A DNA stretch of 63,890 nt, the filler included, from Dugesia japonica (taxonomy: Eukaryota): the NCBI GenBank assembly GCA_001938525.1. It is 6 parts of 6 records of this genome, joined end to end, with 100 filler letters (N's around TTAATTAATTAA, not from the genome) between each part and the next. Parts side by side here need not be neighbours in the genome. Positions count along the whole stretch, not along the records: positions 1 to 11,087 come from MQRL01599061.1; 5 more parts are not named here. One strand, written 5' to 3'. A model generated the notes under the pieces. The model made no database searches and was not told where the DNA came from. It was given only the letters and a program-made list of their open reading frames with translations. A program made the position numbers and the translations under genes. Shown piece after piece: positions 1 through 11,087 of this stretch. The stretch's first letter is position 1. Each line of letters starts with the position of its first letter.

Positions 1-315
1 CGGATATTTTTGAAAAGTTTAGAAAGCAAGTAATGCAGCAAGATGGTCTTGAAGCCTCCAATTTCGTTTCGATAGCGGCTTTAAGTTAGGCTACGGCTAT
101 TAAATCATGTCCGGAAAAAATAGAGCTTTTACAAGATCCGGAGATGTACTTTTTTTCATTTAACTTGATAACATTCGAGAAAAAAAAATTTTTTTTCCAA
201 AGTAATCGTTTTTTCATGCAAGTATGTATATTTATTCAAAGAATTTACAAATATATCTAATCATCAGCAAATGTAAAAATAATTAATCTGTTATAGCTGT
301 CTAGCTATAATAGAA

Positions 316-790
316 GGTGTAAAAACTGTTCTTCTCTCAGTTTTAACTATGAGGGGTAACAAGTTTTTCGCTAAAAAATTTGAGATGAATCTGTCATTTA
401 TCGAGCTTCCAGAGCTCTCGAAAGCAGTGAAAATTCTCTCTCTTTTTTTAAAGTGTAATAACTGTTCTTCTCAGTTTTATCTATAAGGGGTAATAAGTTT
501 TTGCTTTAAAATTTGNNNNNNNNNNNNNNNNNNNNNNNNNNNNNNNNNNNNNNNNNNNNNNNNNNGTTTTAACTATGAGGGGTAACAAGTTTTTCGCTTT
601 AAAATTTGAGATGAATCTGTCATCGATCGAGCTTCCAGAACTCTCGAAAGCAGTGGAAATTCTCTCTTTTTTTAAAGTGTAAAAACTGCTCTTCTCAGTT
701 TTATCTATGAGGGGTAACAAGTTTTTCGCTTTAAAATTTGACATGATTCTGTCATTGACGGAGTCTCGAGAACTCCTAGAAAGCAGTGAA
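316..790. repeat. Tandem repeat of about 132-135 bp, at least 3.5 copies, interrupted by a gap; subterminal to the Polinton-like end at 1102
   Basis: GAGGGGTAACAAGTTTTTCGCT or a close variant recurs at about 351, 486, 577 and 709, with shared TGAATCTGTCAT and CTCTCGAAAGCAGTG blocks. Confidence 0.85.
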
Positions 791-840
791 ATCTCTTTAA
801 ATTAAAATTAATTAAAATTCAAAACAATTTATAGTAACCA

Positions 841-1102
841 ATGACCTTGACCTACTTTTTTTTGAAATNACCTTGACCTAGTTTATGTTGCTAAGGACGG
901 CTGCCATGGTAACCAATAACCTCGATACCGTTGCTAAGGCGGTTGCCATGGTAACCAATGCTCCAGTTGCCGTTGCTAAGGCGGTTGCCATGGAAACGAC
1001 CTTGACCTGCATTGGTTGCCATGGCAACGGTTACCATAGCAACGGGGGACCCCCCTCCCCCCTTTGACCTACTTTGTCCTCGTGTCCTCCTATCTATCTA
1101 CT
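841..1102. mobile_element. Right terminus (TIR) of a Polinton/adintovirus-like element ending ...GTCCTCCTATCTATCTACT
   Basis: Ends in CTATCTACT, the reverse complement of AGTAGATAG starts at 6437 and 55530. TGACCTTGACCTACTTT (842) is the reverse complement of AAAGTAGGTCAAGGT (about 1520). CCTCGTGTCCTCC resembles TCTCGCGTCCTCC just before the terminus at 38040. Abruptly interrupts a transposase fragment at 1103. Confidence 0.6.
887..1043. promoter_or_regulatory. Dense cluster of RFX X-box palindromes with CCAAT boxes and AGGTCA-type half-sites
   Basis: GCTGCCATGGTAAC 900, GTTGCCATGGTAAC 942, GTTGCCATGGAAAC 984, GTTGCCATGGCAAC 1015, GTTACCATAGCAAC 1030; GTTGCTAAGG half-sites at 887, 930 and 972; CCAAT at 913 and 955, ATTGG at 1011. 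Confidence 0.7.
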
Positions 1103-1202
1103 AAAGTTTTTTAAATTTGATATCCAGCGATCAACAGCTGGATGTTCTTCCCTTATAAACTCTACTACTGTATGTAGTGCATGAACTAAACAAGTAACAT
1201 AC
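1103..1202 (-). pseudogene. Fragment of CGGBP-like/hAT-related transposase
   Basis: YVTCLVHALHTVVEFIREEHPAVDRWISNLKNF matches the HVTCxAHxLHxVAExIRxxxPxVDxLISNxKKxF pattern of CGGBP1-like transposases. Confidence 0.55.
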
Positions 1203-1311
1203 AAGGATGGATCTACAGTGGGGGAATGGGGGAGATTCGCCCCTGCATAACCGAATTTAGAAAACGCTATATAACAACAATGAATGGCAGACACACACGA
1301 ATATTAGTATG

Positions 1312-1600
1312 AGTAGGTAGATCCTAGCGCATTGTACCACTCCCCATGTCAAGGTCAAATTTTTTGAAGGTCGATGGTACATAGTATACTCGATTCTGAT
1401 TGGTCAGTGGTATAGTTTACTCGATTATGATTGGTTGAATTTTTAGAGGTCAAATTATTTCAAAGTCAGTGGTATAGTATACTTGATTATGATTGGTGTA
1501 ATATATCAAGGTTAAATTAAAGTAGGTCAAGGTAATTTCCATGGTAACTATCATCCGGTCAGACTTTCCTGCGCAGATTTAATATTTAAATTCCTCGCGC
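1312..1600 (+). mobile_element. Left terminus of a Polinton-like element (AGTAGGTAGAT...)
   Basis: Homologous to 6437-6620 (TCAAGGTCA, TAGTATACTC, AAAGTAGGTCAAGGT, TTTCCATGG(T/C)AACTAT, CAGACTT); three GATTGG repeats. Confidence 0.55.
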
Positions 1601-2548
1601 AGGCTTATTATTAATATTTATTATTTTATTGTTTCAATTATTATTATTTTTTTGTGTTTTAATTTATTAATTTAATTTGTTTTTTTTAAATTATAATTTT
1701 AACAACTATCAAGTGTATAAAAAATTTACTTTAATTAAACTCTTTCTCTTGATACATCATCCTCCTTGATTTGAATTATTATAATTCTAAAATAAAATTA
1801 ATAGCCATTAAATAATAACAATAAATTTGGATTATCCATTGTTGAGTTCGTACAATTTTGAATCCATAAATATTAGACAAAATGGCAATATTTATTAAAA
1901 TTCAAATTTCTGCTTTTCTACATTCTGCTTTTCTGTATTAAAATATATTATGTAAACAAAATGAATTTGTTTAAAGTATATTTTTAATTTAGAATGTAAT
2001 ATGATTAAACGTCATATTACATCCATCATTAAACTTGTCAAATTCATATTTTTAATATTTTTTTTATTGATCATAACCTAAAAATAATTAATAAATAATA
2101 ATAATGAAAAGTATTTACCTTTTCTTTGCTCAACAATGTTCTCAATATGGTTTTATTATTGTTAATAATCTAAACAATATTTAAAGAGATATAAAAAATA
2201 TCAAACTTACGCATCAAAATTGTAGCTTTTAAAAAAAGTTTTTTTTGAAATTTGTGAAAAATATAATGTCGAGTGTCAAAAGAAATTTTCTATTCTCTTT
2301 GTATGTGTATCATATATTTTCTATCCCCATTTAACTATTTCTATGTGTGTATTAAATTTTTCTATCTCCATTGTATGTGTGTATTATATTATTTCTATAC
2401 CCTTTATAAGTGTGTATCACTAATGTTAAAATACCAAAAAGTAAACTACTTAAAAATATCACAACGTAATATAATTTAAGTGTGTATGTCTAACATTTTT
2501 TTGTCAATTATATATATCTCTAAATAAATTTGTCATTTTACAATAATT

Positions 2549-3098
2549 ATGTATAATAAAATTATTAAAGAAACAGCTTTTGCTATGCTTGAAGATGGTT
2601 TAACGTTTTTGGAAATTTCAAATCGCATGAAAGTATCAATTTCAACTTTATTCAGATGGAAAAATAGAGATCAAATAACAAATAAAAGAAAAACTTCTGA
2701 ACAGTCAACACTTAAGAGGAAATTAAGAAAGATGATAAAACCCAATAAACCGATTAAACTCAACATCAAATTATGCATAATACATACAGAAAATTAAAAA
2801 TACAAATGCATAAAAATACAAATGCACAATGTAACACGTATATTTACACTGTTCATAAAATTAACCATAATATATTCAATAATGATTGATTAATAGAGAT
2901 CAAATAACAAATAAAAGAAAAACTTCTGAACAGTCAACACTTCAGAGCAAATTAAGAAAGATGATGAAACCCAAAATGAAAACCGAAATGAATAAAAGTA
3001 TTCCTGTTAGAGATCCAAAAGAAGAAAGACAATTTCATGTCTTCAATGACGATTATCCTTTTTTATTCGAGTATGAGAAACCTTATTTCATCAAATGA
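2549..3098 (+). pseudogene. Small helix-turn-helix protein disrupted by an internal duplication/insertion
   Basis: GLTFLEISNRMKVSISTLFRWK is an HTH pattern. NRDQITNKRKTSEQSTL is encoded twice (about 2663 and 2892). The intervening 2745-2893 is a copy of 3559-3709. Confidence 0.5.
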
Positions 3099-3289
3099 TG
3101 AGAGGAAATCAATGCAAAACCATGCATGGTATTATTCCTACATCGAAAGAAACAATAAATATTGATATTTTTGAACCTGCATATTCAATTATAAGGTAAT
3201 TATTTGATGTTAATTTCAGAGATAAAAATAAAATGTATAATAATTTGAATTTGTCATTTAATAAATGTTAATTTCAAATGTCGTTTTTG

Positions 3290-6200
3290 TTATATAATGG
3301 TTTATATGATTATTTAAATTTTTTCTAAGGTTTTATAGTGACTGATAATCAATTTATAACCAATCTATATATTGTAAATATAAGGTTTTATATGATATTC
3401 ATACGATTTTTAAATATTTTGTATATGATTTTGTATGGTTTTTACAGGGTACACATAGAATAATTTAAAGGTTTTGATATATTCCTATGGGGTAATTTAA
3501 AGTTTATAGTCTTATAGATCATTTAGGGTTATTATAGTATTTAGACACGATAAAATCAAATAAACCAATTAAACTCAACATAAATTATTCATAATACATA
3601 CAGAAAATTAAATATACAAATGCATAGACTAAATAAATACACAATTTAACACGTATATTTACACTGTTCATACAATTAACCATAATATATTCAATAATGA
3701 TTGATTAATAAGCAAAATTGTAGGTTTTTATATGATTTTCATAAGTTTAATAGGGTTTTTTATAGTTTTATTTATGTATTTTTATATACTTTTATTTGGT
3801 TTTTATGTTTTTATATGGTTAATTTAAGGCTTATTGCGGTTTTATATAGTTTTATAAAGTTTTATATAATCTTATTAAATATTATCCATTTTATAATAGA
3901 TGTTAATCACATAATAAAGAACTAATACATACATACACACACGCATAATGAATCATATACGCACAAAATGAAACCTATACATGCATAATTAACAATACAC
4001 GCTCAACAAACCATGAATCATACCTATACAACACAAATACCAGTCAAACAAAGACATTACAACACGAGTGCAACTAGAACAAAGAGCATAAGTCATACTT
4101 NNNNNNNNNNNNNNNNNNNNNNNNNNNNNNNNNNNNNNNNNNNNNNNNNNNNNNNNNNNNNNNNNNNNNNNNNNNNNNNNNNNNNNNNNNNNNNNNNNNN
4201 NNNNNNNNNNNNNNNNNNNNNNNNNNNNNNNNNNNNNNNNNNNNNNNNNNNNNNNNNNNNNNNNNNNNNNNNNNNNNNNNNNNNNNNNNNNNNNNNNNNN
4301 NNNNNNNNNNAATGTATTTATATGGGACTTATATGGTTATAATATGGTTTTCTAAGGTAATTATAGGGTTATAATAGAGTTTTATATGATTGATGGGTTT
4401 TTATATCTTTTAATAGGGTTTTATATGTTTCTCTAAGGTATTTAAATGGTATTTATATGATTTAATTTGTTATTATATTGCTTTTTATATGGATTTTATA
4501 AGAATTATAAGATTTTTATAGAGTAAATATAGGGNNNNNNNNNNNNNNNNNNNNNNNNNNNNNNNNNNNNNNNNNNNNNNNNNNTTTATAAGAATTATAA
4601 GATTTTTATAGAGTAAATATAGGGTTTTATATGTTCTTATTATGCTTTTATCGGGTTTTATATGGTAATTATCTATGTTTTATAAGGTAATCATAGGTTT
4701 TGATAGAGTAATTATATCATTTTTTATGAGCTTATTAATCAATTCTTTTAAAATTACATATATTTCAATGAAAAGTTACTAGATGTCATGTAATNNNNNN
4801 NNNNNNNNNNNNNNNNNNNNNNNNNNNNNNNNNNNNNNNNNNNNAATCAATTCTTTTAAAATTACATATATTTCAATGAAAAGTTACTAGATGTCATGTA
4901 ATTATTTCAAAAGATTTATCAGAGATACGGTAATTATTTCAAAAAGTTACCAGAGATCTGGTAGTTCATTCTAAAAGTTACTAGATGTCACAAACATTTT
5001 CAAATTCCCATGTAAAACATAGGGAAAATAACTGAAAGATTTACTAGATATCCGAAATATTTCAAAGTTACCAGAGGTTCGTTAATTTTTGTAAAAAGTT
5101 GCCAGAGGTCCTTAAAATATTTTTAAAAAGTTACCTAATATCATGTAATTATTTCTAAATATTTACTCTATGTTCCTGAAAAGTTACTAGAGTTAGAAAA
5201 TCTAATACATTCATTAAAATCATGAAATAAACCAAATGCACTCAATGAAACAATTAACAGCATACATTCAATAATTACATCATATAAACGAAAATATTTC
5301 AAAGAAATCTATATATTAAATATATTCAGTACATTCATATACACATTAATATACTTAATCTACACAATTTATAAATCATTTTATTAATAAAATATGCAAA
5401 GTTCATTCAAAGTTTCATAGATTTACATATACATTTGATTAAAAATAATTTACAAACTAGAATATGTTTTCTATAGGCTTTATAGGATAATTATTGGGTT
5501 TTATAAGGTAATTATATAGTAATTATATGGTTTCTTTAATGTATTTATAAGGTTTTATTAGGTTTATAAGGTAATTATATGGTTTTATATGTTCTTATAG
5601 TGTTTTTTATTGGATTTTTTAGTTTTTATAGGGTCTTATATGGTAATTATATGGTTTTATTTTCTATTTATATGGTTTCTTTATTGGATTTATAAGTTAA
5701 TTATACGGCTTTTATTGGATTTTTATGGGATCTTATGGGGTATATTTAAGATTTGTAATGTTTTTTATAGGATTTTATATGAGCTCATTGATTAAATATT
5801 TCGAAATGACATTTACATCTATGTAATCATTTCAACAGAGTCTAATACAAAAAACCTAATAGAGCTTCATACATAGTAAATTAATCGAATCTTATACATA
5901 TGAAACCAATAAGGACTTGTACACAATAAAACCAATGTGATCTTATACATAAAATAAACTAAATAGAGTAATGTAATACACACAATTAACATAATATAGT
6001 CATATAATACGCATAATATGTTCTATATATTCATATAATATACACAATAAACTCAATATAATGACATAATGCATGAAATGCACAAAATAATGCCATAAAT
6101 TACACCCAGTAATGTCAAATAATAAACCCAATAAAGTCACTTAAATACACACAATATACTCTATAAAATATAAAAATTTTAAAAATCACATAGAAGTCAA

Positions 6201-9200
6201 CAAAAAATTTCAATTTCCTATGTACACCAATAGGAAAAAATTTCAAAAATTGCATAGAAGACCGCAAGAAATTTTAAAAATTATATAAGTCGGTTAAATT
6301 TTCAAAAAATTACATAGAGTCGGTAAAATTTTATAATAAAAAAAATTTGAAAAAGTAAAAATAAATTGTTAACAGTGAAAAATTAATTTTAACAATTAAT
6401 TTTGCAACACTAAATAAAAATAATGTCAATCACAAAAGTAGATAGATACTGGCGCACTAGATCAACCCCCTCCCCGGAGAAGAAAATTTTTCAAGGTCAT
6501 TGATCTAGTATACTCAATTTTTAATAGTGGATTATTTCAAGATCGAATAATTGTAGGTCAAGGTTAAATAAAAGTAGTTAAAGGTTATTTCCATGGCAAC
6601 TATAATCTGGACAGACTTCATATTTAAATCCTACCATTATTTAAACTTACCATATTTGTTGAAATATTTACCTTGAATTCATTCTGTTAGTATCTAAAAT
6701 TTAAAAAACACATTAAAATAAATTAACAAATAAATATTTACTTATTTTATAATAGATTTTTCAAGGTCATCTACCGTTTTACTTATTAAACTCAGTTAAA
6801 CAAAAAATATAATATAATATAATTTCCATATAATAATAATTAATTATAAATCATTTTTAATTTAAAATACTTAAACAAAACATAATTTAATATTAATTTA
6901 AAATTTATTAATTAAAAGCTTATTAATTAAAATCTTATGAACTTTAAAAACATTTTCAAACCAATATAACCTTAAAACTTTTAAAGAATATATAAAAATA
7001 TATAGATAACCTATAAAATCACATAATATTCTAAAGAAACCAACATTAAAACTTTGATTTATAGTGCATTTTATTGTTTCCATTGCATTAATGTTGCAAA
7101 AATAGGACTCATGTTCTTTGTTTAATTGAATTCCTGTTGCATTTTCTTTGTTATAGTGTCATTAGTGTTGCATTTTCCTTGTTATAGTTAAATTTATATT
7201 TTAATGTTTAATTATTTATTTAATTGTTTTTTTAATAAATGATTGAATTTTGTGGAAATTGTAAAATTTGTTTTACTTTTGTTTTTTTGTTTAAATTTTC
7301 TTTTTTTATTCTTATATATTTATATTTTATTTATTTATTTATTTTTTGAAAAATGTTTTATTTTTTTTGTTTTAATAAATGGTAAATTTTTGTAGAAATT
7401 GTAAAATTTGTTTTACTTTTGTGTTTTTTTGTTCAAATTATCTCTTTTTCTTATATTTTTTTTGTTTTAATAAATGGCTGATTTTTGTAGAAATTGTAAA
7501 ATTTGTTTTAATTGTGTTTTTTGAAATTTTTTTTTAAAATTTTTTTCTGGTGGGTAATTTTATGCCATTTTTAAAATATTTTGTCGACTTCTATGAAATT
7601 TTAAAAATTTTTTAAAGACTTCAATGCAATTTTTGAAAAATTTTCCCATTGGTTTACATAGAAATTTTAAAATATTATTATCAATTATTTCCTTATCAAT
7701 AATATCATCATTTAGTTGAGTATCCTCCATCTCTTTCTCTGTTGATGCCTCTATTTCAATTATTTCTGCATCATTTCCTTGAAAATCATCTACTATAAAA
7801 TAACGATTTAGATTAATAATAGTTATTATTATTACCTTGAATCGATGAAGTTATTTGTTCAATCATATCGTCTGAAATATTATACAAATCCATTAATAAT
7901 CAGTTAAGTTTATATTAGTCCTTTGTATATCTTACATTTTCAATGATTAACATGTATTTATGATGCCCCCATGGATTAATATGTATAAAATATTTTAATA
8001 TTTCCTCGGGAACAATTAATATTAATATTTTAAATAGATGAGTATATTTGTTGTATAATGTGTATTTTATGACTCTATTTGGTTTATTGCATGTATTTAC
8101 CTGTATTTATAGGGGTTTTTGTATCTTTTAACTAGTTTAATTGATGTATTTGTATGTATTGAATGTAATTAGGTTTATTGTGAGTGTATTATATGAAATT
8201 ATTACGGTTATTGTATATATTATTTGACTATATCGAGTTAATTGTATGTATTATATGACTATTGGATATATTGTGTGTATACAAATGATTTTATTTGGTT
8301 AAATATATGTATTATATGACATTATTTCGTGTATTATGCGTATTATATGACATTATTTTATATATTGTGGTTACTATAGTGTATATTGTATGTACTATGT
8401 GAATATATAGAGAATATTATGTATGCATTATATATAATTACAATTATTGTGAGAATAATTGTTGGACTTAACCATTGATCGGATTTGAGATTTCATTAAA
8501 NNNNNNNNNNNNNNNNNNNNNNNNNNNNNNNNNNNNNNNNNNNNNNNNNNNNNNNNNNNNNNNNNNNNNNNNNNNNNNNNNNNNNNNNNNNNNNNNNNNN
8601 NNNNNNNNNNNNNNNNNNNNNNNNNNNNNNNNNNNNNNNNNNNNNNNNNNNNNNNNNNNNNNNNNNNNNNNNNNNNNNNNNNNNNNNNNNNNNNNNNNNN
8701 NNNNNNNNNNNNNTATATAACATTATTGGGCGTATTGTATGTATTATATGATATTATTTCATGTAATATATGAATATAAGGTAAATTTTATGTATTTAAG
8801 TGACTATATTGAGTTTATTGTATGTATTATTTATTTTTTTAGGTTTATTGGATGTATTATATGAATATATAGAATATATTGTATGCATTTATATGACTTT
8901 AATGGGTTAATTATATGTATTATAGAACATTATTAGGTGTAATTTATAACATTATTTAATGTATTGTTTGTATAATAAGGTGTATTGTGTGTATTATATC
9001 ATTATAATGTGTTAATTGCGTGTATTATATGACTTTATAGATTTTAATGTGTAATATAAGAACTAATTGAGTTTAATGTATGAATCCATTGACTTTATAT
9101 AGTTTATTGTGTATATAATATCCACTGGTTTACTATATATGAAGCTCTATTGAGTTTTTTGTTAGACTCTATGTTATTTTTGTAAAATAATATACATCTA

Positions 9201-9830
9201 TGTGATGTTTAAAAATATTGCATAGACATATATGCTATGTTTGAGAATATAACATAGACATCTATGTTATGCTTGAAAATATTATTATATGTTTATGTAA
9301 TTTATCTATGCAATTTATATAAACTTTATGCAATTTATGTAAACTACAAAATTTTATAAAAACCTTACTTTTCCTTATTATTTGACCTTTTGTTTACTTA
9401 CTTGCAAACCTATAATGAATTGTCTTTGTTAACTTGTAAAAGTATAACTCATGCTCTTTGTTCTAGTTGCACTTGTGTAACAATGTCTTTGGTTGACTTG
9501 AATTTGTGATATAGAGGTATCACTCATACCCTTTTTAAACATGTATTTGTGTATGTGTGTATATATTGGCTCATTATATGTGTATTAATTTATTATGTAA
9601 TAAAAATCAAATATAAGTTCGAAAATATTTTATAAGACCATAAAATCATAAAAAACAGTATAATGATATATGAAACCCAATAGGATTATATAAAATCCTA
9701 AAAATACATAATGAATCATTATAAAAACCCTTTAGACTCCTATAAGAATCAATATAGAAACCTTAAATAAACCTATTAGAATATATAGAAAATAAATATA
9801 AATATTAGTATAAACATATGTTTATGTATT
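3290..9830. repeat. Patchwork of degenerate strand-asymmetric minisatellites arranged as a large imperfect inverted repeat
   Basis: GGTTTTATA-rich, ACACAAT-rich and about 31-bp AAAAGTTACTAGA blocks. Inverted matches: 4013-4100 with 9441-9527; 5836-5880 with 9128-9172; about 6185-6260 with 7585-7670. Confidence 0.65.
6437..6625 (+). mobile_element. Second left terminus of the same Polinton-like family (AGTAGATAGATACTGGCGCA)
   Basis: Homology to 1312-1570, including the X-box-like TTTCCATGGCAAC at 6588-6600. Confidence 0.55.
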
Positions 9831-9837
9831 TATTTAA

Positions 9838-10164
9838 ATGAAAATAAATTTCGAAAGAAGTATTAAATTTTTTACTGTTTTGATTAAATCGCCTAACGTG
9901 TTGAGAATGAAAATTCTACAGGCGTTGCCAACCTATGTTGTTGAGGATTTGGTAGACATTATCAAAGGTTTTGTTAGTGGGAATATAACTACAAGTAGGA
10001 CTCAAAAGGATGCATTGAATAAATATAAAAGACCTATATTATCACTTGTAAATTCAAAGAGTAGAAGATTAACGAGAAAGATTATGCATGATCAAGAAGG
10101 TGGTTTTATATCAGTACTTCTACCAATTTTATTATACTCATTAGACGTGAGTTATCTCGAATAA
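9838..10164 (+). CDS. Polinton/adintovirus-type small basic protein with QxGGF-amphipathic tail (putative virion core or membrane-active precursor)
   Basis: LNKYKRPILSLVNSKSRRLTRKIMHDQEGGFISVLLP resembles the conserved LxKYKxxIRxL...RKIxxQxGGFLxxLL ORF of Polintons/adintoviruses; xGG-F resembles an adenain cleavage site. Confidence 0.6.
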   Translation: MKINFERSIKFFTVLIKSPNVLRMKILQALPTYVVEDLVDIIKGFVSGNITTSRTQKDALNKYKRPILSLVNSKSRRLTRKIMHDQEGGFISVLLPILLYSLDVSYLE

Positions 10165-11087
10165 TGTATGTCCCCGAGCGCCAGACAATGGGGCGCCAAA
10201 ATGGGGTTTGAAATATTTGTATTGTGTATTTTTTGTACCGTTTTAATATGATATCTATCAAGATTGAAGGTTCGTCACTCTCTTGCGGTCAACTTTTTGT
10301 TATGCATTATCAATCTTATTGTATGAATTTAATATTGCTAAACCTAGTCGATAAACTACAGATTTCTTAACCTATGACCAGAAAAATACATCTTATTTGT
10401 ATATCGGCCAATCGGATTGTATGCACAGTGCTATACTAGTGGCCTATTACTGACTACTCGGAAATCGAAAGAGACACAAATATAATCAGATACGCTCAGC
10501 AGTCAGCAGCAACTAAAAGCTTCGCCTGCATCCAGGCTACAAATTCGTTCTGTATTAATCAGTGAGACATAGAAAGTAATCCAAGTTCCAACACATATAG
10601 GAGTGGATGCAGGCAGCTGGGAAGGAACTGGGCTTGACATACTTGGCATCAGATTTGGCAGTGAACTCGTGCATCCCAACGTGTGTGCTGCAGTCGCGGG
10701 CCCACGGCCAGTCACTGTGGTGAACCTTAGACCAGCATTTGTCATAAGAATTTGCTAGAATTACATGCATATTTATCGTCTGTATGAAAATTGACAATTT
10801 TCAAAATTAATTATAGTATTGATATTCCAAAAAATAAATAGTACATAATATTATTTATATAATAATAATAGTCATATTATTCATGTTTGGTAGAAAACTA
10901 AGTGGAGCGCAAAGCTGTAAGATGAAGAAAAATGCTGAGCAAGCAGAAAAGAAATCCAGTGAATTATTCAAAAACTTTTTTAAAAACGCTAAGTCAGACA
11001 AATCTGAGTCAGAATTCATTTTATTTTTATTTCTTTATTTAAAATTAAACGTTTACACCTAACAGTAGTAGTAGTAGTAGTTAGGGT

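What the first reader, a model, noticed from the sequence alone, without database searches (positions are those of the whole stretch)
887..1043. Element terminus built as a homotypic RFX X-box / CCAAT / nuclear-receptor enhancer
Seen: five near-perfect 14-bp X-box palindromes, three GTTGCTAAGG half-sites, adjacent CCAAT boxes and TGACCTTGACCT within about 200 bp of the terminus. The same X-boxes occur at the termini in contig D (37614, 37889, 38481, 38587) and at 1535 and 6587. Known: GTTRCCATGGYAAC is the RFX site, RFX cooperates with NF-Y, and RFX factors drive ciliogenesis and spermatid programmes. TCAAGGTCA is an NR5A/ERR-type site. Inference: this Polinton-like family may couple its transcription or terminal replication to host RFX, for example to activate in the male germline, as adenovirus ITRs use NFI/Oct-1.
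Basis: partly seen in the sequence, partly recalled or inferred. Interest (0 to 1): 0.8.

Follow-up and report, generated by a model that had tools for sequence, protein, structure and literature searches.

The report
RFX-site array in transposon terminus
Near the tip of a decayed virus-like transposon remnant, one 27-base core was copied several times, giving five textbook binding sites for the host RFX transcription factor; whether RFX ever drove the element is untested, and two related ends nearby lack the array.

Summary
Positions 887-1043 hold five 14-bp X-box-type sites, three GTTGCTAAGG sites, abutting CCAAT pentamers and AGGTCA repeats, 59-215 bp from a repeat boundary at 1102. One site (1015-1028) is letter for letter the published palindromic RFX site. 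All matches in the piece to the stricter published X-box consensi lie here.

The cluster is not five independent sites. It is a 42-bp tandem repeat plus a 15-bp tandem pair and an internal 20-bp inverted copy. The 27-bp core is far better kept between units than the 15-bp spacer, which argues against a plain young minisatellite.

Three related terminal units (836-1102 inverted, 1312-1597, 6437-6632) share an AGTAG tip, AGGTCA-type repeats and an inner block. Only the first has the array; the other two have one half-site.

Support for "Polinton-like" is indirect: the tip motif, and an intact Polinton-type small gene 8.7 kb away. No polymerase or integrase is detectable in the piece, and no partner terminus. 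No relatives of the array were found in public collections.

Best reading: a copy- or subfamily-specific amplified enhancer of host-factor sites in a dead element's terminus. Germline or replication coupling cannot be judged here.

The parts
887..1043 (.). Array of RFX-type sites: 12 monomer sites (GTTRCY) in 157 bp, arranged as five 14-bp X-box-type sites and three GTTGCTAAGG sites.
   Evidence: Monomer density is 7.6 per 100 bp here and 0.17 per 100 bp in the rest of the piece.
900..913 (.). X-box-type site 1. Meets the intermediate consensus only.
942..955 (.). X-box-type site 2. Meets the strict consensus on both strands.
984..997 (.). X-box-type site 3. Meets the intermediate consensus.
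1015..1028 (.). X-box-type site 4. A perfect 14-bp palindrome, identical to the published classic RFX site.
1030..1043 (.). X-box-type site 5. Meets the strict consensus.
887..997 (+). 42-bp tandem repeat, 2.6 units. A 27-bp core (monomer site plus X-box) is well kept; the 15-bp spacer has diverged.
   Evidence: Core differences are 1-3 of 27 and spacer differences 7-13 of 15.
942..1028 (.). Internal inverted repeat. The 20-bp arms 942-961 and 1009-1028 (X-box plus CCAAT) enclose unit 3. It forms a strong hairpin if single-stranded.
   Evidence: z = -4.4; a 20-bp stem in both the minimum-energy and centroid structures.
836..1102 (-). Terminal unit A, 267 bp, 50% G+C, with its tip at 1102 and reading leftwards into the element.
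   Evidence: Similarity to units B and C starts exactly at the tip; the flanks are unrelated.
1091..1102 (-). Tip motif of unit A, beginning AGTAG on the minus strand. It is identical to the tip of unit C.
   Evidence: End-motif literature.
1044..1062 (.). G/C run between the tip region and the array. Units B and C have shorter C-rich runs at the same place.
842..853 (-). Double AGGTCA repeat containing TCAAGGTCA. Further AGGTCA sites start at 874, 1003 and 1065. All point the same way relative to the tip.
827..835 (-). TATA-like box at the inner edge of unit A. Units B and C have counterparts at 1547-1555 and 6599-6607.
   Evidence: Read from the sequence and from the alignments. Its function is inferred.
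1312..1597 (+). Terminal unit B. Same tip type; a 62-bp tandem repeat (1403-1519) with three reverse CCAAT boxes; one half X-box at 1535-1548; no array.
6437..6632 (+). Terminal unit C. Same tip; a single copy of the B-type unit; one half X-box at 6587-6600; no array and no CCAAT.
3..165 (+). Short reading frame at the left edge that looked polymerase-B-like from memory only. If it is a gene remnant, it has one in-frame stop and is truncated.
   Evidence: No support from Pfam, PDB or the word search. Untested lead.
9838..10164 (+). Intact 108-codon gene of a small-protein family that lies next to the integrase in Polinton/Maverick-like contigs. Not linked to the array.

Best explanation
The 157-bp stretch is a locally amplified subterminal repeat array. 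It sits inside the roughly 270-bp terminal unit (836-1102, tip at 1102) of a decayed, AGTAG-tipped, probably Polinton/Maverick-like element.

How it arose: a 27-bp core, made of one RFX monomer site plus one 14-bp palindromic X-box, was copied three times in tandem. Two more X-boxes were then added, partly as an inverted copy.

How it most likely worked while the element was alive: as a copy-number-amplified enhancer. It would load dimers of a host RFX-type winged-helix factor, alongside AGGTCA-type nuclear-receptor sites, onto a TATA-like promoter at the inner edge of the terminal unit that reads into the element.

The array is a gain of this copy or subfamily. The parts shared by the family are the tip, the AGGTCA repeats and an inner block with one half X-box.

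Shown: the motifs, their enrichment, the duplication architecture, the uneven conservation, the shared boundary, and identity to the published RFX site.
Inferred: RFX binding, enhancer activity, the promoter, and the Polinton affiliation.
For: - Site identity. 1015-1028 equals the classic palindromic RFX site quoted in PMC3414849 and the core of the human RFX4 SELEX motif. Three sites meet the strictest and five the intermediate published consensus, and no other site in the piece does. There are 12 monomer sites in 157 bp, about 44 times the density elsewhere.
- Uneven conservation. Between units the 27-bp core differs at 1-3 positions and the 15-bp spacer at 7-13 (Fisher p from 0.0015 to 4e-7). 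This is not what a uniform, neutral, recent duplication gives.
- Terminus. Three copies share a sharp boundary at AGTAG with unrelated flanks. The tip resembles Maverick end-motifs, and the unit length falls in the reported TIR range.
- Other host-factor-type motifs recur in all units. AGGTCA occurs 10 times in the three units against 0.54 expected from their own composition, always in the same orientation relative to the tip. TCAAGGTCA occurs once in each unit.
- The best-kept block between units B and C contains the half X-box and the TATA-like box.
- Precedent. RFX1/RFX3 bind the AAV inverted terminal repeat and the enhancers of hepatitis B virus and polyomavirus.
- A Polinton-type gene is present in the piece.
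Against: - Only one of the three related termini has the array.
- No relative of the array was found in viral contigs, in metagenome contigs, or among predicted proteins.
- About 40 kb of Polinton-like contigs that carry the related small gene hold no X-box cluster, although none of them reaches a terminus.
- No gene lies downstream of any of the three putative promoters, and none of the termini has a partner.
- No polymerase or integrase is detectable in the piece.
- The host is unknown, and RFX is confined to opisthokonts and amoebozoans.
- The sites owe their number to duplication, so the statistics reduce to roughly one or two founding events.
Confidence: 0.45

Rival explanations
1. Neutral minisatellite. 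A GC-richer stretch in the terminus of a dead element expanded by replication slippage, and its likeness to the RFX site is incidental and never mattered.
For: - The array is a tandem repeat with few units.
- Related termini carry different tandem units and different copy numbers (2.6 units in B, 1 in C), so the subterminal region is prone to expansion.
- The element is decayed and without genes.
- One strict X-box match is expected about 0.07 times per piece of this size, so founders exist by chance genome-wide.
Against: - The core is much better kept than the spacer between units.
- The variant sites mostly still meet the published consensus.
- One site matches the 14-bp published palindrome exactly.
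- A separate 15-bp tandem pair and an inverted copy multiply the same site again by independent events.
Confidence: 0.25
2. Binding sites for a protein of the element itself (integrase, terminal protein or another DNA-binding protein). This would be like the subterminal repeats that transposases of many TIR transposons recognise; the likeness to RFX sites would be convergent.
For: - Subterminal repeated short motifs in both orientations, close to a tip, are the usual layout of transposase-binding sites (established knowledge of Ac/Ds, En/Spm and P elements).
- The core is conserved and the spacer is not.
- The palindromes suit a dimeric binder.
Against: - Units B and C, which have the same tip and so presumably the same enzyme, lack the array.
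- No element-encoded sequence-specific binder is detectable here.
- The exact match to the host RFX optimum would have to be coincidence.
Confidence: 0.12
3. A host regulatory region, for example the promoter or enhancer of a ciliary gene or of the neighbouring snRNA-like repeats. It would be no part of a mobile element, and the 'tip' would only be the edge of a segmental duplication.
For: - X-boxes are typical of host ciliary gene promoters.
- U2-snRNA-like tandem units lie directly beside it at 284-800.
Against: - Three copies in 11 kb, in both orientations, share the same sharp boundary and have unrelated flanks.
- No host gene is detectable beside any copy.
- The surroundings are repeats throughout.
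Confidence: 0.08
4. Auxiliary replication origin. Host RFX bound near the tip helps protein-primed initiation, as NFI and Oct-1 do in adenovirus.
For: - The tip has a reiterated end-motif of the kind linked to jumping-back in protein-primed replication.
- RFX binds the AAV terminal repeat.
- The array can fold into a strong hairpin as single-stranded DNA.
Against: - The array starts 59 bp and ends 215 bp from the tip. By established knowledge of the adenovirus origin, its auxiliary sites abut the core origin within about 50 bp of the end.
- The array is absent from related termini.
- No polymerase gene could be confirmed in the piece.
Confidence: 0.05

Closest known systems
[quoted passage not shown]
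   Same: A host RFX site sits inside the terminal repeat of a small DNA replicon, and binding there modulates expression.
   Different: AAV has a single, imperfect site in a 20-nt element of a ssDNA parvovirus, and binding was shown by experiment. Here there are five to eight near-optimal sites made by duplication, in a dsDNA transposon-like remnant, with no binding data.
EF-C/RFX sites in the enhancers of hepatitis B virus and polyomavirus (as summarised in PMC5760533)
   Same: An inverted-repeat RFX site is used by a virus as an enhancer element.
   Different: Those sites are internal enhancers, single-copy and not terminal.
Tandemly duplicated enhancer units in viral and retroelement control regions, such as the SV40 72-bp repeats, retroviral LTR enhancer repeats and mouse L1 promoter monomers (established knowledge)
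   Same: A short unit carrying host-factor sites is amplified in tandem, and unit number varies between copies.
   Different: The factor (RFX) and the carrier (terminal unit of an AGTAG-tipped DNA element) are different, and no activity data exist here.
Adenovirus inverted terminal repeat with NFI and Oct-1 sites (established knowledge; end-motif and jumping-back in PMC8097293)
   Same: Host-factor sites lie near the end of an element with a reiterated tip motif.
   Different: The array lies 59-215 bp from the tip rather than next to the core origin, it is multi-copy, and protein-primed replication is not established for this remnant.
Subterminal repeats of TIR DNA transposons (Ac/Ds, En/Spm, P; established knowledge)
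   Same: Short repeated motifs in both orientations lie within a few hundred bp of the tip, and their number varies.
   Different: Those motifs bind the element's own transposase and are shared by all copies of a family. Here the array is missing from two related termini, and its sequence is that of a host-factor site.
MHC class II S-X-Y module and ciliary gene X-box promoters
   Same: X-box and CCAAT motifs occur together, and the X-box sequence is as in ciliary promoters.
   Different: Here each CCAAT overlaps its X-box by one base instead of lying a fixed distance away. There are many X-boxes, and no host gene is attached.

Membership tests
RFX X-box (binding-site class) | Matches the published consensus of two inverted half-sites with a 1-3 bp spacer | tested here: met
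   Three sites meet the strict and five the intermediate consensus of PMC2375033. One site equals the classic palindrome of PMC3414849.
RFX X-box (binding-site class) | Bound by an RFX protein | not testable with these tools
   No binding or occupancy data are reachable for this genome.
RFX X-box (binding-site class) | Host encodes an RFX factor (opisthokonts and amoebozoans only) | not testable with these tools
   The host is unknown. RFX distribution comes from PMC10530576. Exact look-ups of window proteins found no source record.
RFX X-box (binding-site class) | Site conserved in related copies | tested here: not met
   Units B and C carry one half-site only. At the matching position, unit A has lost even that.
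Polinton/Maverick terminal inverted repeat | Reiterated end-motif starting with AG, of (AGT)2 or (AG)3 type | tested here: met
   The tips of all three units begin AGTAG followed by a reiterated TAGA-type tetranucleotide. End-motifs are described in PMC8097293. The match to (AGT)2 covers five of six bases.
Polinton/Maverick terminal inverted repeat | An inverted partner terminus bounding the element | tested here: not met
   No partner exists in the piece for any of the three tips. A and B lie back to back, 209 bp apart, facing away from each other. Element A runs off the left edge of the piece, so a partner could lie outside it.
Polinton/Maverick terminal inverted repeat | 6-bp target site duplication | not testable with these tools
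   This needs both ends of one element.
Polinton/Maverick terminal inverted repeat | Protein-primed polymerase B and rve integrase inside the element | tested here: inconclusive
   No Pfam family of Polintons hits any of 77 stop-to-stop frames. Integrase and ATPase of related contigs give no tblastn match. The left-edge frame looked polymerase-like from memory only and got no tool support.
Polinton/Maverick terminal inverted repeat | Other Polinton genes in the neighbourhood | tested here: met
   The ORF at 9838-10164 belongs to a family placed between a Pox_A32-type ATPase and an rve integrase in contigs L005 and L009-L013, and 10 of 36 members hit Adeno_PX. It lies 8.7 kb from the array and is not linked to it.
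RFX plus NF-Y cooperative module | A CCAAT box at a distance from the X-box that allows both factors to bind | tested here: not met
   The CCAAT pentamers at 913, 955 and 1011 (reverse) each share one base with an X-box. That this hinders joint binding is an inference.
ERR/NR5A extended half-site | Exact TCAAGGTCA | tested here: met
   Present at 842-850 (minus strand), 1349 and 6491, once in each terminal unit. The consensus comes from PMC8451941. Binding was not testable.
Adenovirus-type auxiliary origin | Host-factor sites directly beside the core origin at the tip | tested here: not met
   The array lies 59-215 bp from the tip. The comparison distance is from established knowledge of the adenovirus origin.

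The most novel reading that the evidence does not exclude
A lineage of Polinton/Maverick-like elements in an animal genome has built an array of optimal RFX sites into its terminal repeat. Its transcription is thereby tied to RFX-expressing cells, such as ciliated or spermatogenic cells. This would be the first host-factor wiring described for this class of virus-like transposon.
Probability: 0.2. Interest if true: 0.7.

Novelty: new member of a known kind. Interest (0 to 1): 0.4.

Why it matters
How Polintons/Mavericks are switched on in animal cells is largely unknown, and no paper in the searched library links them to RFX. If arrays of RFX sites turned out to be a regular feature of the ends of polymerase-bearing copies, they would give a concrete prediction that expression data alone could check: in which cells these elements are transcribed. 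As it stands, the piece shows one decayed terminus with such an array. That makes it a good lead for a genome-wide census, not evidence of a regulatory strategy.

Tried and rejected
- Coding repeat. The 60-codon frame across the array has no Pfam hit and no relative. Rejected.
- Structured RNA. Only a far sub-threshold isrG match, 19 bits against a cut-off of 100. Rejected.
- Relatives of the array by DNA pattern. Viral contigs gave none in four scans. Metagenome contigs gave three single chance matches: two in a bacterial regulator gene and one in a eukaryote-like contig, L003. None was an array. L003 was read once around the match, then set aside and not compared further.
- Source organism. 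Exact look-ups of two window ORFs found nothing on record.
- Polymerase-like left edge. A read-through with X at the break would have needed typed letters, so it was left out.
- Ciliate code (only TGA as stop). It gives long frames, but that is expected in DNA this AT-rich, and they cannot be sent to the family tools by reference. Left open.
- Similarity of units A, B and C, and of the 209-bp stretch between A and B, to any fetched locus: none.
- Integrase, ATPase, protease and other genes of the related contigs against the window: only the small gene matches.

Full report
OBSERVATION. The piece (1-11087) is AT-rich, mostly 15-25% G+C, and made almost wholly of repeats. Positions 887-1043 stand out: the terminal unit that holds them is 50% G+C.

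That is 14 strand-matches against 0.6 expected. GTTGCTAAGG occurs at 887, 930 and 972. ACCTTGACCT occurs at 844, 870 and 999. CCAAT occurs at 838, 913 and 955, and in reverse at 1011.

I took X-box consensi from a paper, not from memory (PMC2375033). Three sites meet the strictest form (0.07 expected) and all five the intermediate form (0.77 expected). Nothing else in the piece meets either. [quoted passage not shown] Counting the monomer site GTTRCY (PMC10530576), there are 12 in 157 bp, about 44 times the density of the rest of the piece.

HOW THE CLUSTER IS BUILT. The sites are not independent.
- Tandem Repeats Finder reports a 42-bp unit of 2.6 copies at 887-997 and a 15-bp unit of 2.1 copies at 1014-1045. 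In register, each 42-bp unit is a 27-bp core (monomer site plus X-box) followed by a 15-bp spacer.
- X-box 2 with its CCAAT (942-961) is repeated in inverted form at 1009-1028. As single-stranded DNA the region would therefore form a 20-bp stem (z = -4.4).
- Between units, the core differs at 1, 2 and 3 of 27 positions, and the spacer at 7, 13 and 12 of 15 (Fisher p = 0.0015, 4e-7 and 1e-5).

A young neutral duplication should diverge evenly. The unevenness points to constraint on the core, to conversion, or to a composite origin. The sample is three units, so this is suggestive only.

WHERE IT SITS. Three stretches of the piece are copies of one terminal unit: A (836-1102, inverted), B (1312-1597) and C (6437-6632). 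Their similarity begins at the same base, a tip that reads AGTAG followed by a reiterated tetranucleotide. Outside the tip the flanks are unrelated. That is the signature of a mobile-element end.

Behind the tip all three units have:
- a short G- or C-rich run;
- AGGTCA-type repeats, 10 in the three units against 0.54 expected from their own composition, all in the same orientation relative to the tip;
- one exact TCAAGGTCA each, the published ERR/NR5A-type site;
- a variable tandem repeat;
- an inner block with a double AGGTCA-type repeat and a TATA-like box.

In B and C the inner block also holds one site with a good RFX half and a poor other half (1535-1548 and 6587-6600). It is the best-kept part between B and C. 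In A that half-site is degenerate, and A alone carries the X-box array.

B carries a different 62-bp unit with three reverse CCAAT boxes in about 2.6 copies (1378-1526, counting the partial copy before the 1.9 copies that TRF reports at 1403-1519). C has that unit once. So the subterminal region of this family expands readily, and the array is a feature of one copy or subfamily, at least among the three ends visible here.

IS IT POLINTON-LIKE?

For:
- The tip resembles the (AGT)2-type end-motif, and the unit length falls within the TIR sizes described for vertebrate Mavericks (PMC8097293).
- The piece ends with (AGT)6 at 11064-11081.
- The intact 108-codon ORF at 9838-10164 belongs to a family of about 105-120-residue proteins, with 107 representative clusters at E below 0.001.
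- In metagenome contigs this family lies between a Pox_A32-type packaging ATPase and an rve (plus chromo) integrase, with a Peptidase_C5-type protease further on. Ten of 36 members hit Pfam Adeno_PX.

Against:
- That gene lies 8.7 kb from the array, with a foldback-like repeat structure in between, and has no ATPase or integrase beside it in the window.
- None of 77 stop-to-stop frames hits a Polinton family in Pfam.
- None of the three tips has an inverted partner in the piece. A and B lie back to back, 209 bp apart.
- The frame at the left edge (3-165) looked to me like part of a protein-primed polymerase B, but only from memory. It has one in-frame stop and is truncated, and its pieces searched apart found nothing.
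- A read-through with X would have needed typed letters and was left out.

The affiliation is plausible, not shown.

RELATIVES ELSEWHERE. Pattern scans of viral contigs found nothing. The one metagenome scan found three single chance matches, none an array. A protein search with the spurious frame across the array also found nothing. The Polinton-like contigs reached through the small gene hold no X-box cluster in about 40 kb, but none reaches a recognisable end. The source organism could not be identified. This matters because RFX is confined to opisthokonts and amoebozoans.

MECHANISM.
- Best reading (0.45): an amplified enhancer of host-factor sites in the terminal unit, feeding a promoter at its inner edge. 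It was gained by this copy or subfamily and is now part of a dead remnant.
- Rivals: a neutral minisatellite with an incidental likeness (0.25); sites for a protein of the element itself (0.12); a host regulatory region (0.08); an auxiliary replication origin (0.05).
The adenovirus analogy is weakened by the 59-215 bp distance from the tip. Germline activation cannot be judged here.

COMPARISON AND NOVELTY. Host RFX at a viral terminal repeat is known for AAV, and RFX sites serve the enhancers of hepatitis B virus and polyomavirus (PMC5760533). Tandem amplification of enhancer units is classical for viral and retroelement control regions. No paper in the library links Polintons or Mavericks with RFX. 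I rate this a new member of a known kind, of moderate interest, and a lead for a census rather than a result.

LIMITS AND SLIPS.
- In my own reasoning I recalled short strings from memory: an X-box consensus, X-box sites of individual host genes, the start of an snRNA, and polymerase motifs. I also noted the nature and place of the one break in the left-edge frame.
- The consensi used in scripts came from papers and the patterns used in searches came from the window. Three of those patterns had N or another ambiguity letter where the repeat units or copies differ. They were used as motif patterns only.
- The contigs L005-L013 were reached by looking up relatives of the window's own small protein. 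Some carry Bcl-2-like and RING genes, which hints at an animal host. On seeing that, I fetched no more, and built nothing from them.
- L003 looks eukaryotic and of unknown origin. It was read once and then left aside.
- No N was filled.

Noticed in passing
window 284-800: The roughly 113-bp tandem units directly beside the terminal unit give repeated weak matches to U2 spliceosomal RNA (26, 19 and 18 bits; gathering score 46). They may be a satellite or SINE-like repeat derived from a U2 gene.
   Followed up: partly
window 9777-10170 (ORF 9838-10164) and L001: An intact 108-codon gene of a small-protein family sits here as a solitary roughly 400-bp repeat unit, without its usual neighbours. 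In Polinton/Maverick-like contigs the family lies between the packaging ATPase and the integrase, and 10 of 36 members hit Adeno_PX. An 86% identical copy lies on a 903-bp ENA contig with different flanks.
   Followed up: partly
window 3-165: A short frame at the left edge looked like part of a protein-primed polymerase B, from memory only. It has one in-frame stop and is truncated. No tool supported the likeness.
   Followed up: partly
window 3944-6365 and 7507-9597: A large foldback-like inverted structure with arms of more than 2 kb at 68-76% identity. The arms are built of short periodic tandem repeats (periods near 10-11 and 31 bp). Terminal unit C lies in the 1.1-kb centre.
   Followed up: partly
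window 11064-11087: The piece ends with (AGT)6 followed by TTAGGG-like letters. This could be the tip of another Maverick-type element with an (AGT)n end-motif, or just a microsatellite. It is cut by the edge of the piece.
   Followed up: no
window 2528-3100 and 3549-3710: A fragment with a weak IS630/Tc1-type transposase helix-turn-helix (E = 3e-4, at the Pfam cut-off). A 91-nt segment of it is duplicated (2655-2745 and 2884-2974), and a 160-nt insert is repeated at 3549-3710.
   Followed up: no
window 4495-4534 / 4585-4624, 4737-4794 / 4845-4902, and 437-514 / 661-738: The sequence on the two sides of the N gaps at 4535-4584 and 4795-4844 is repeated exactly (40 and 58 nt). This looks like uncollapsed assembly overlap. 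Copy numbers of the tandem repeats near gaps are therefore unreliable.
   Followed up: no
L009 6413-6859, L010 5629-6075; L011 229-669 and 1492-1890; L013 305-745: The Polinton-like metagenome contigs reached through the small gene carry accessory genes with Pfam hits to TBP (TATA-binding protein), Bcl-2 (weak) and a RING finger (weak). The Bcl-2-like gene hints at an animal host.
   Followed up: no
window 1103-1311: The 209 bp between the back-to-back tips of units A and B are about 41% G+C, well above the background, with no recognisable gene or RNA. What this spacer is remains unexplained.
   Followed up: no
window 7560-7900, minus strand: A possible small two-exon reading frame with an AT-rich intron of GT..AG type. 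Its second half runs into a 31-bp tandem repeat, so it is probably not a real gene.
   Followed up: no
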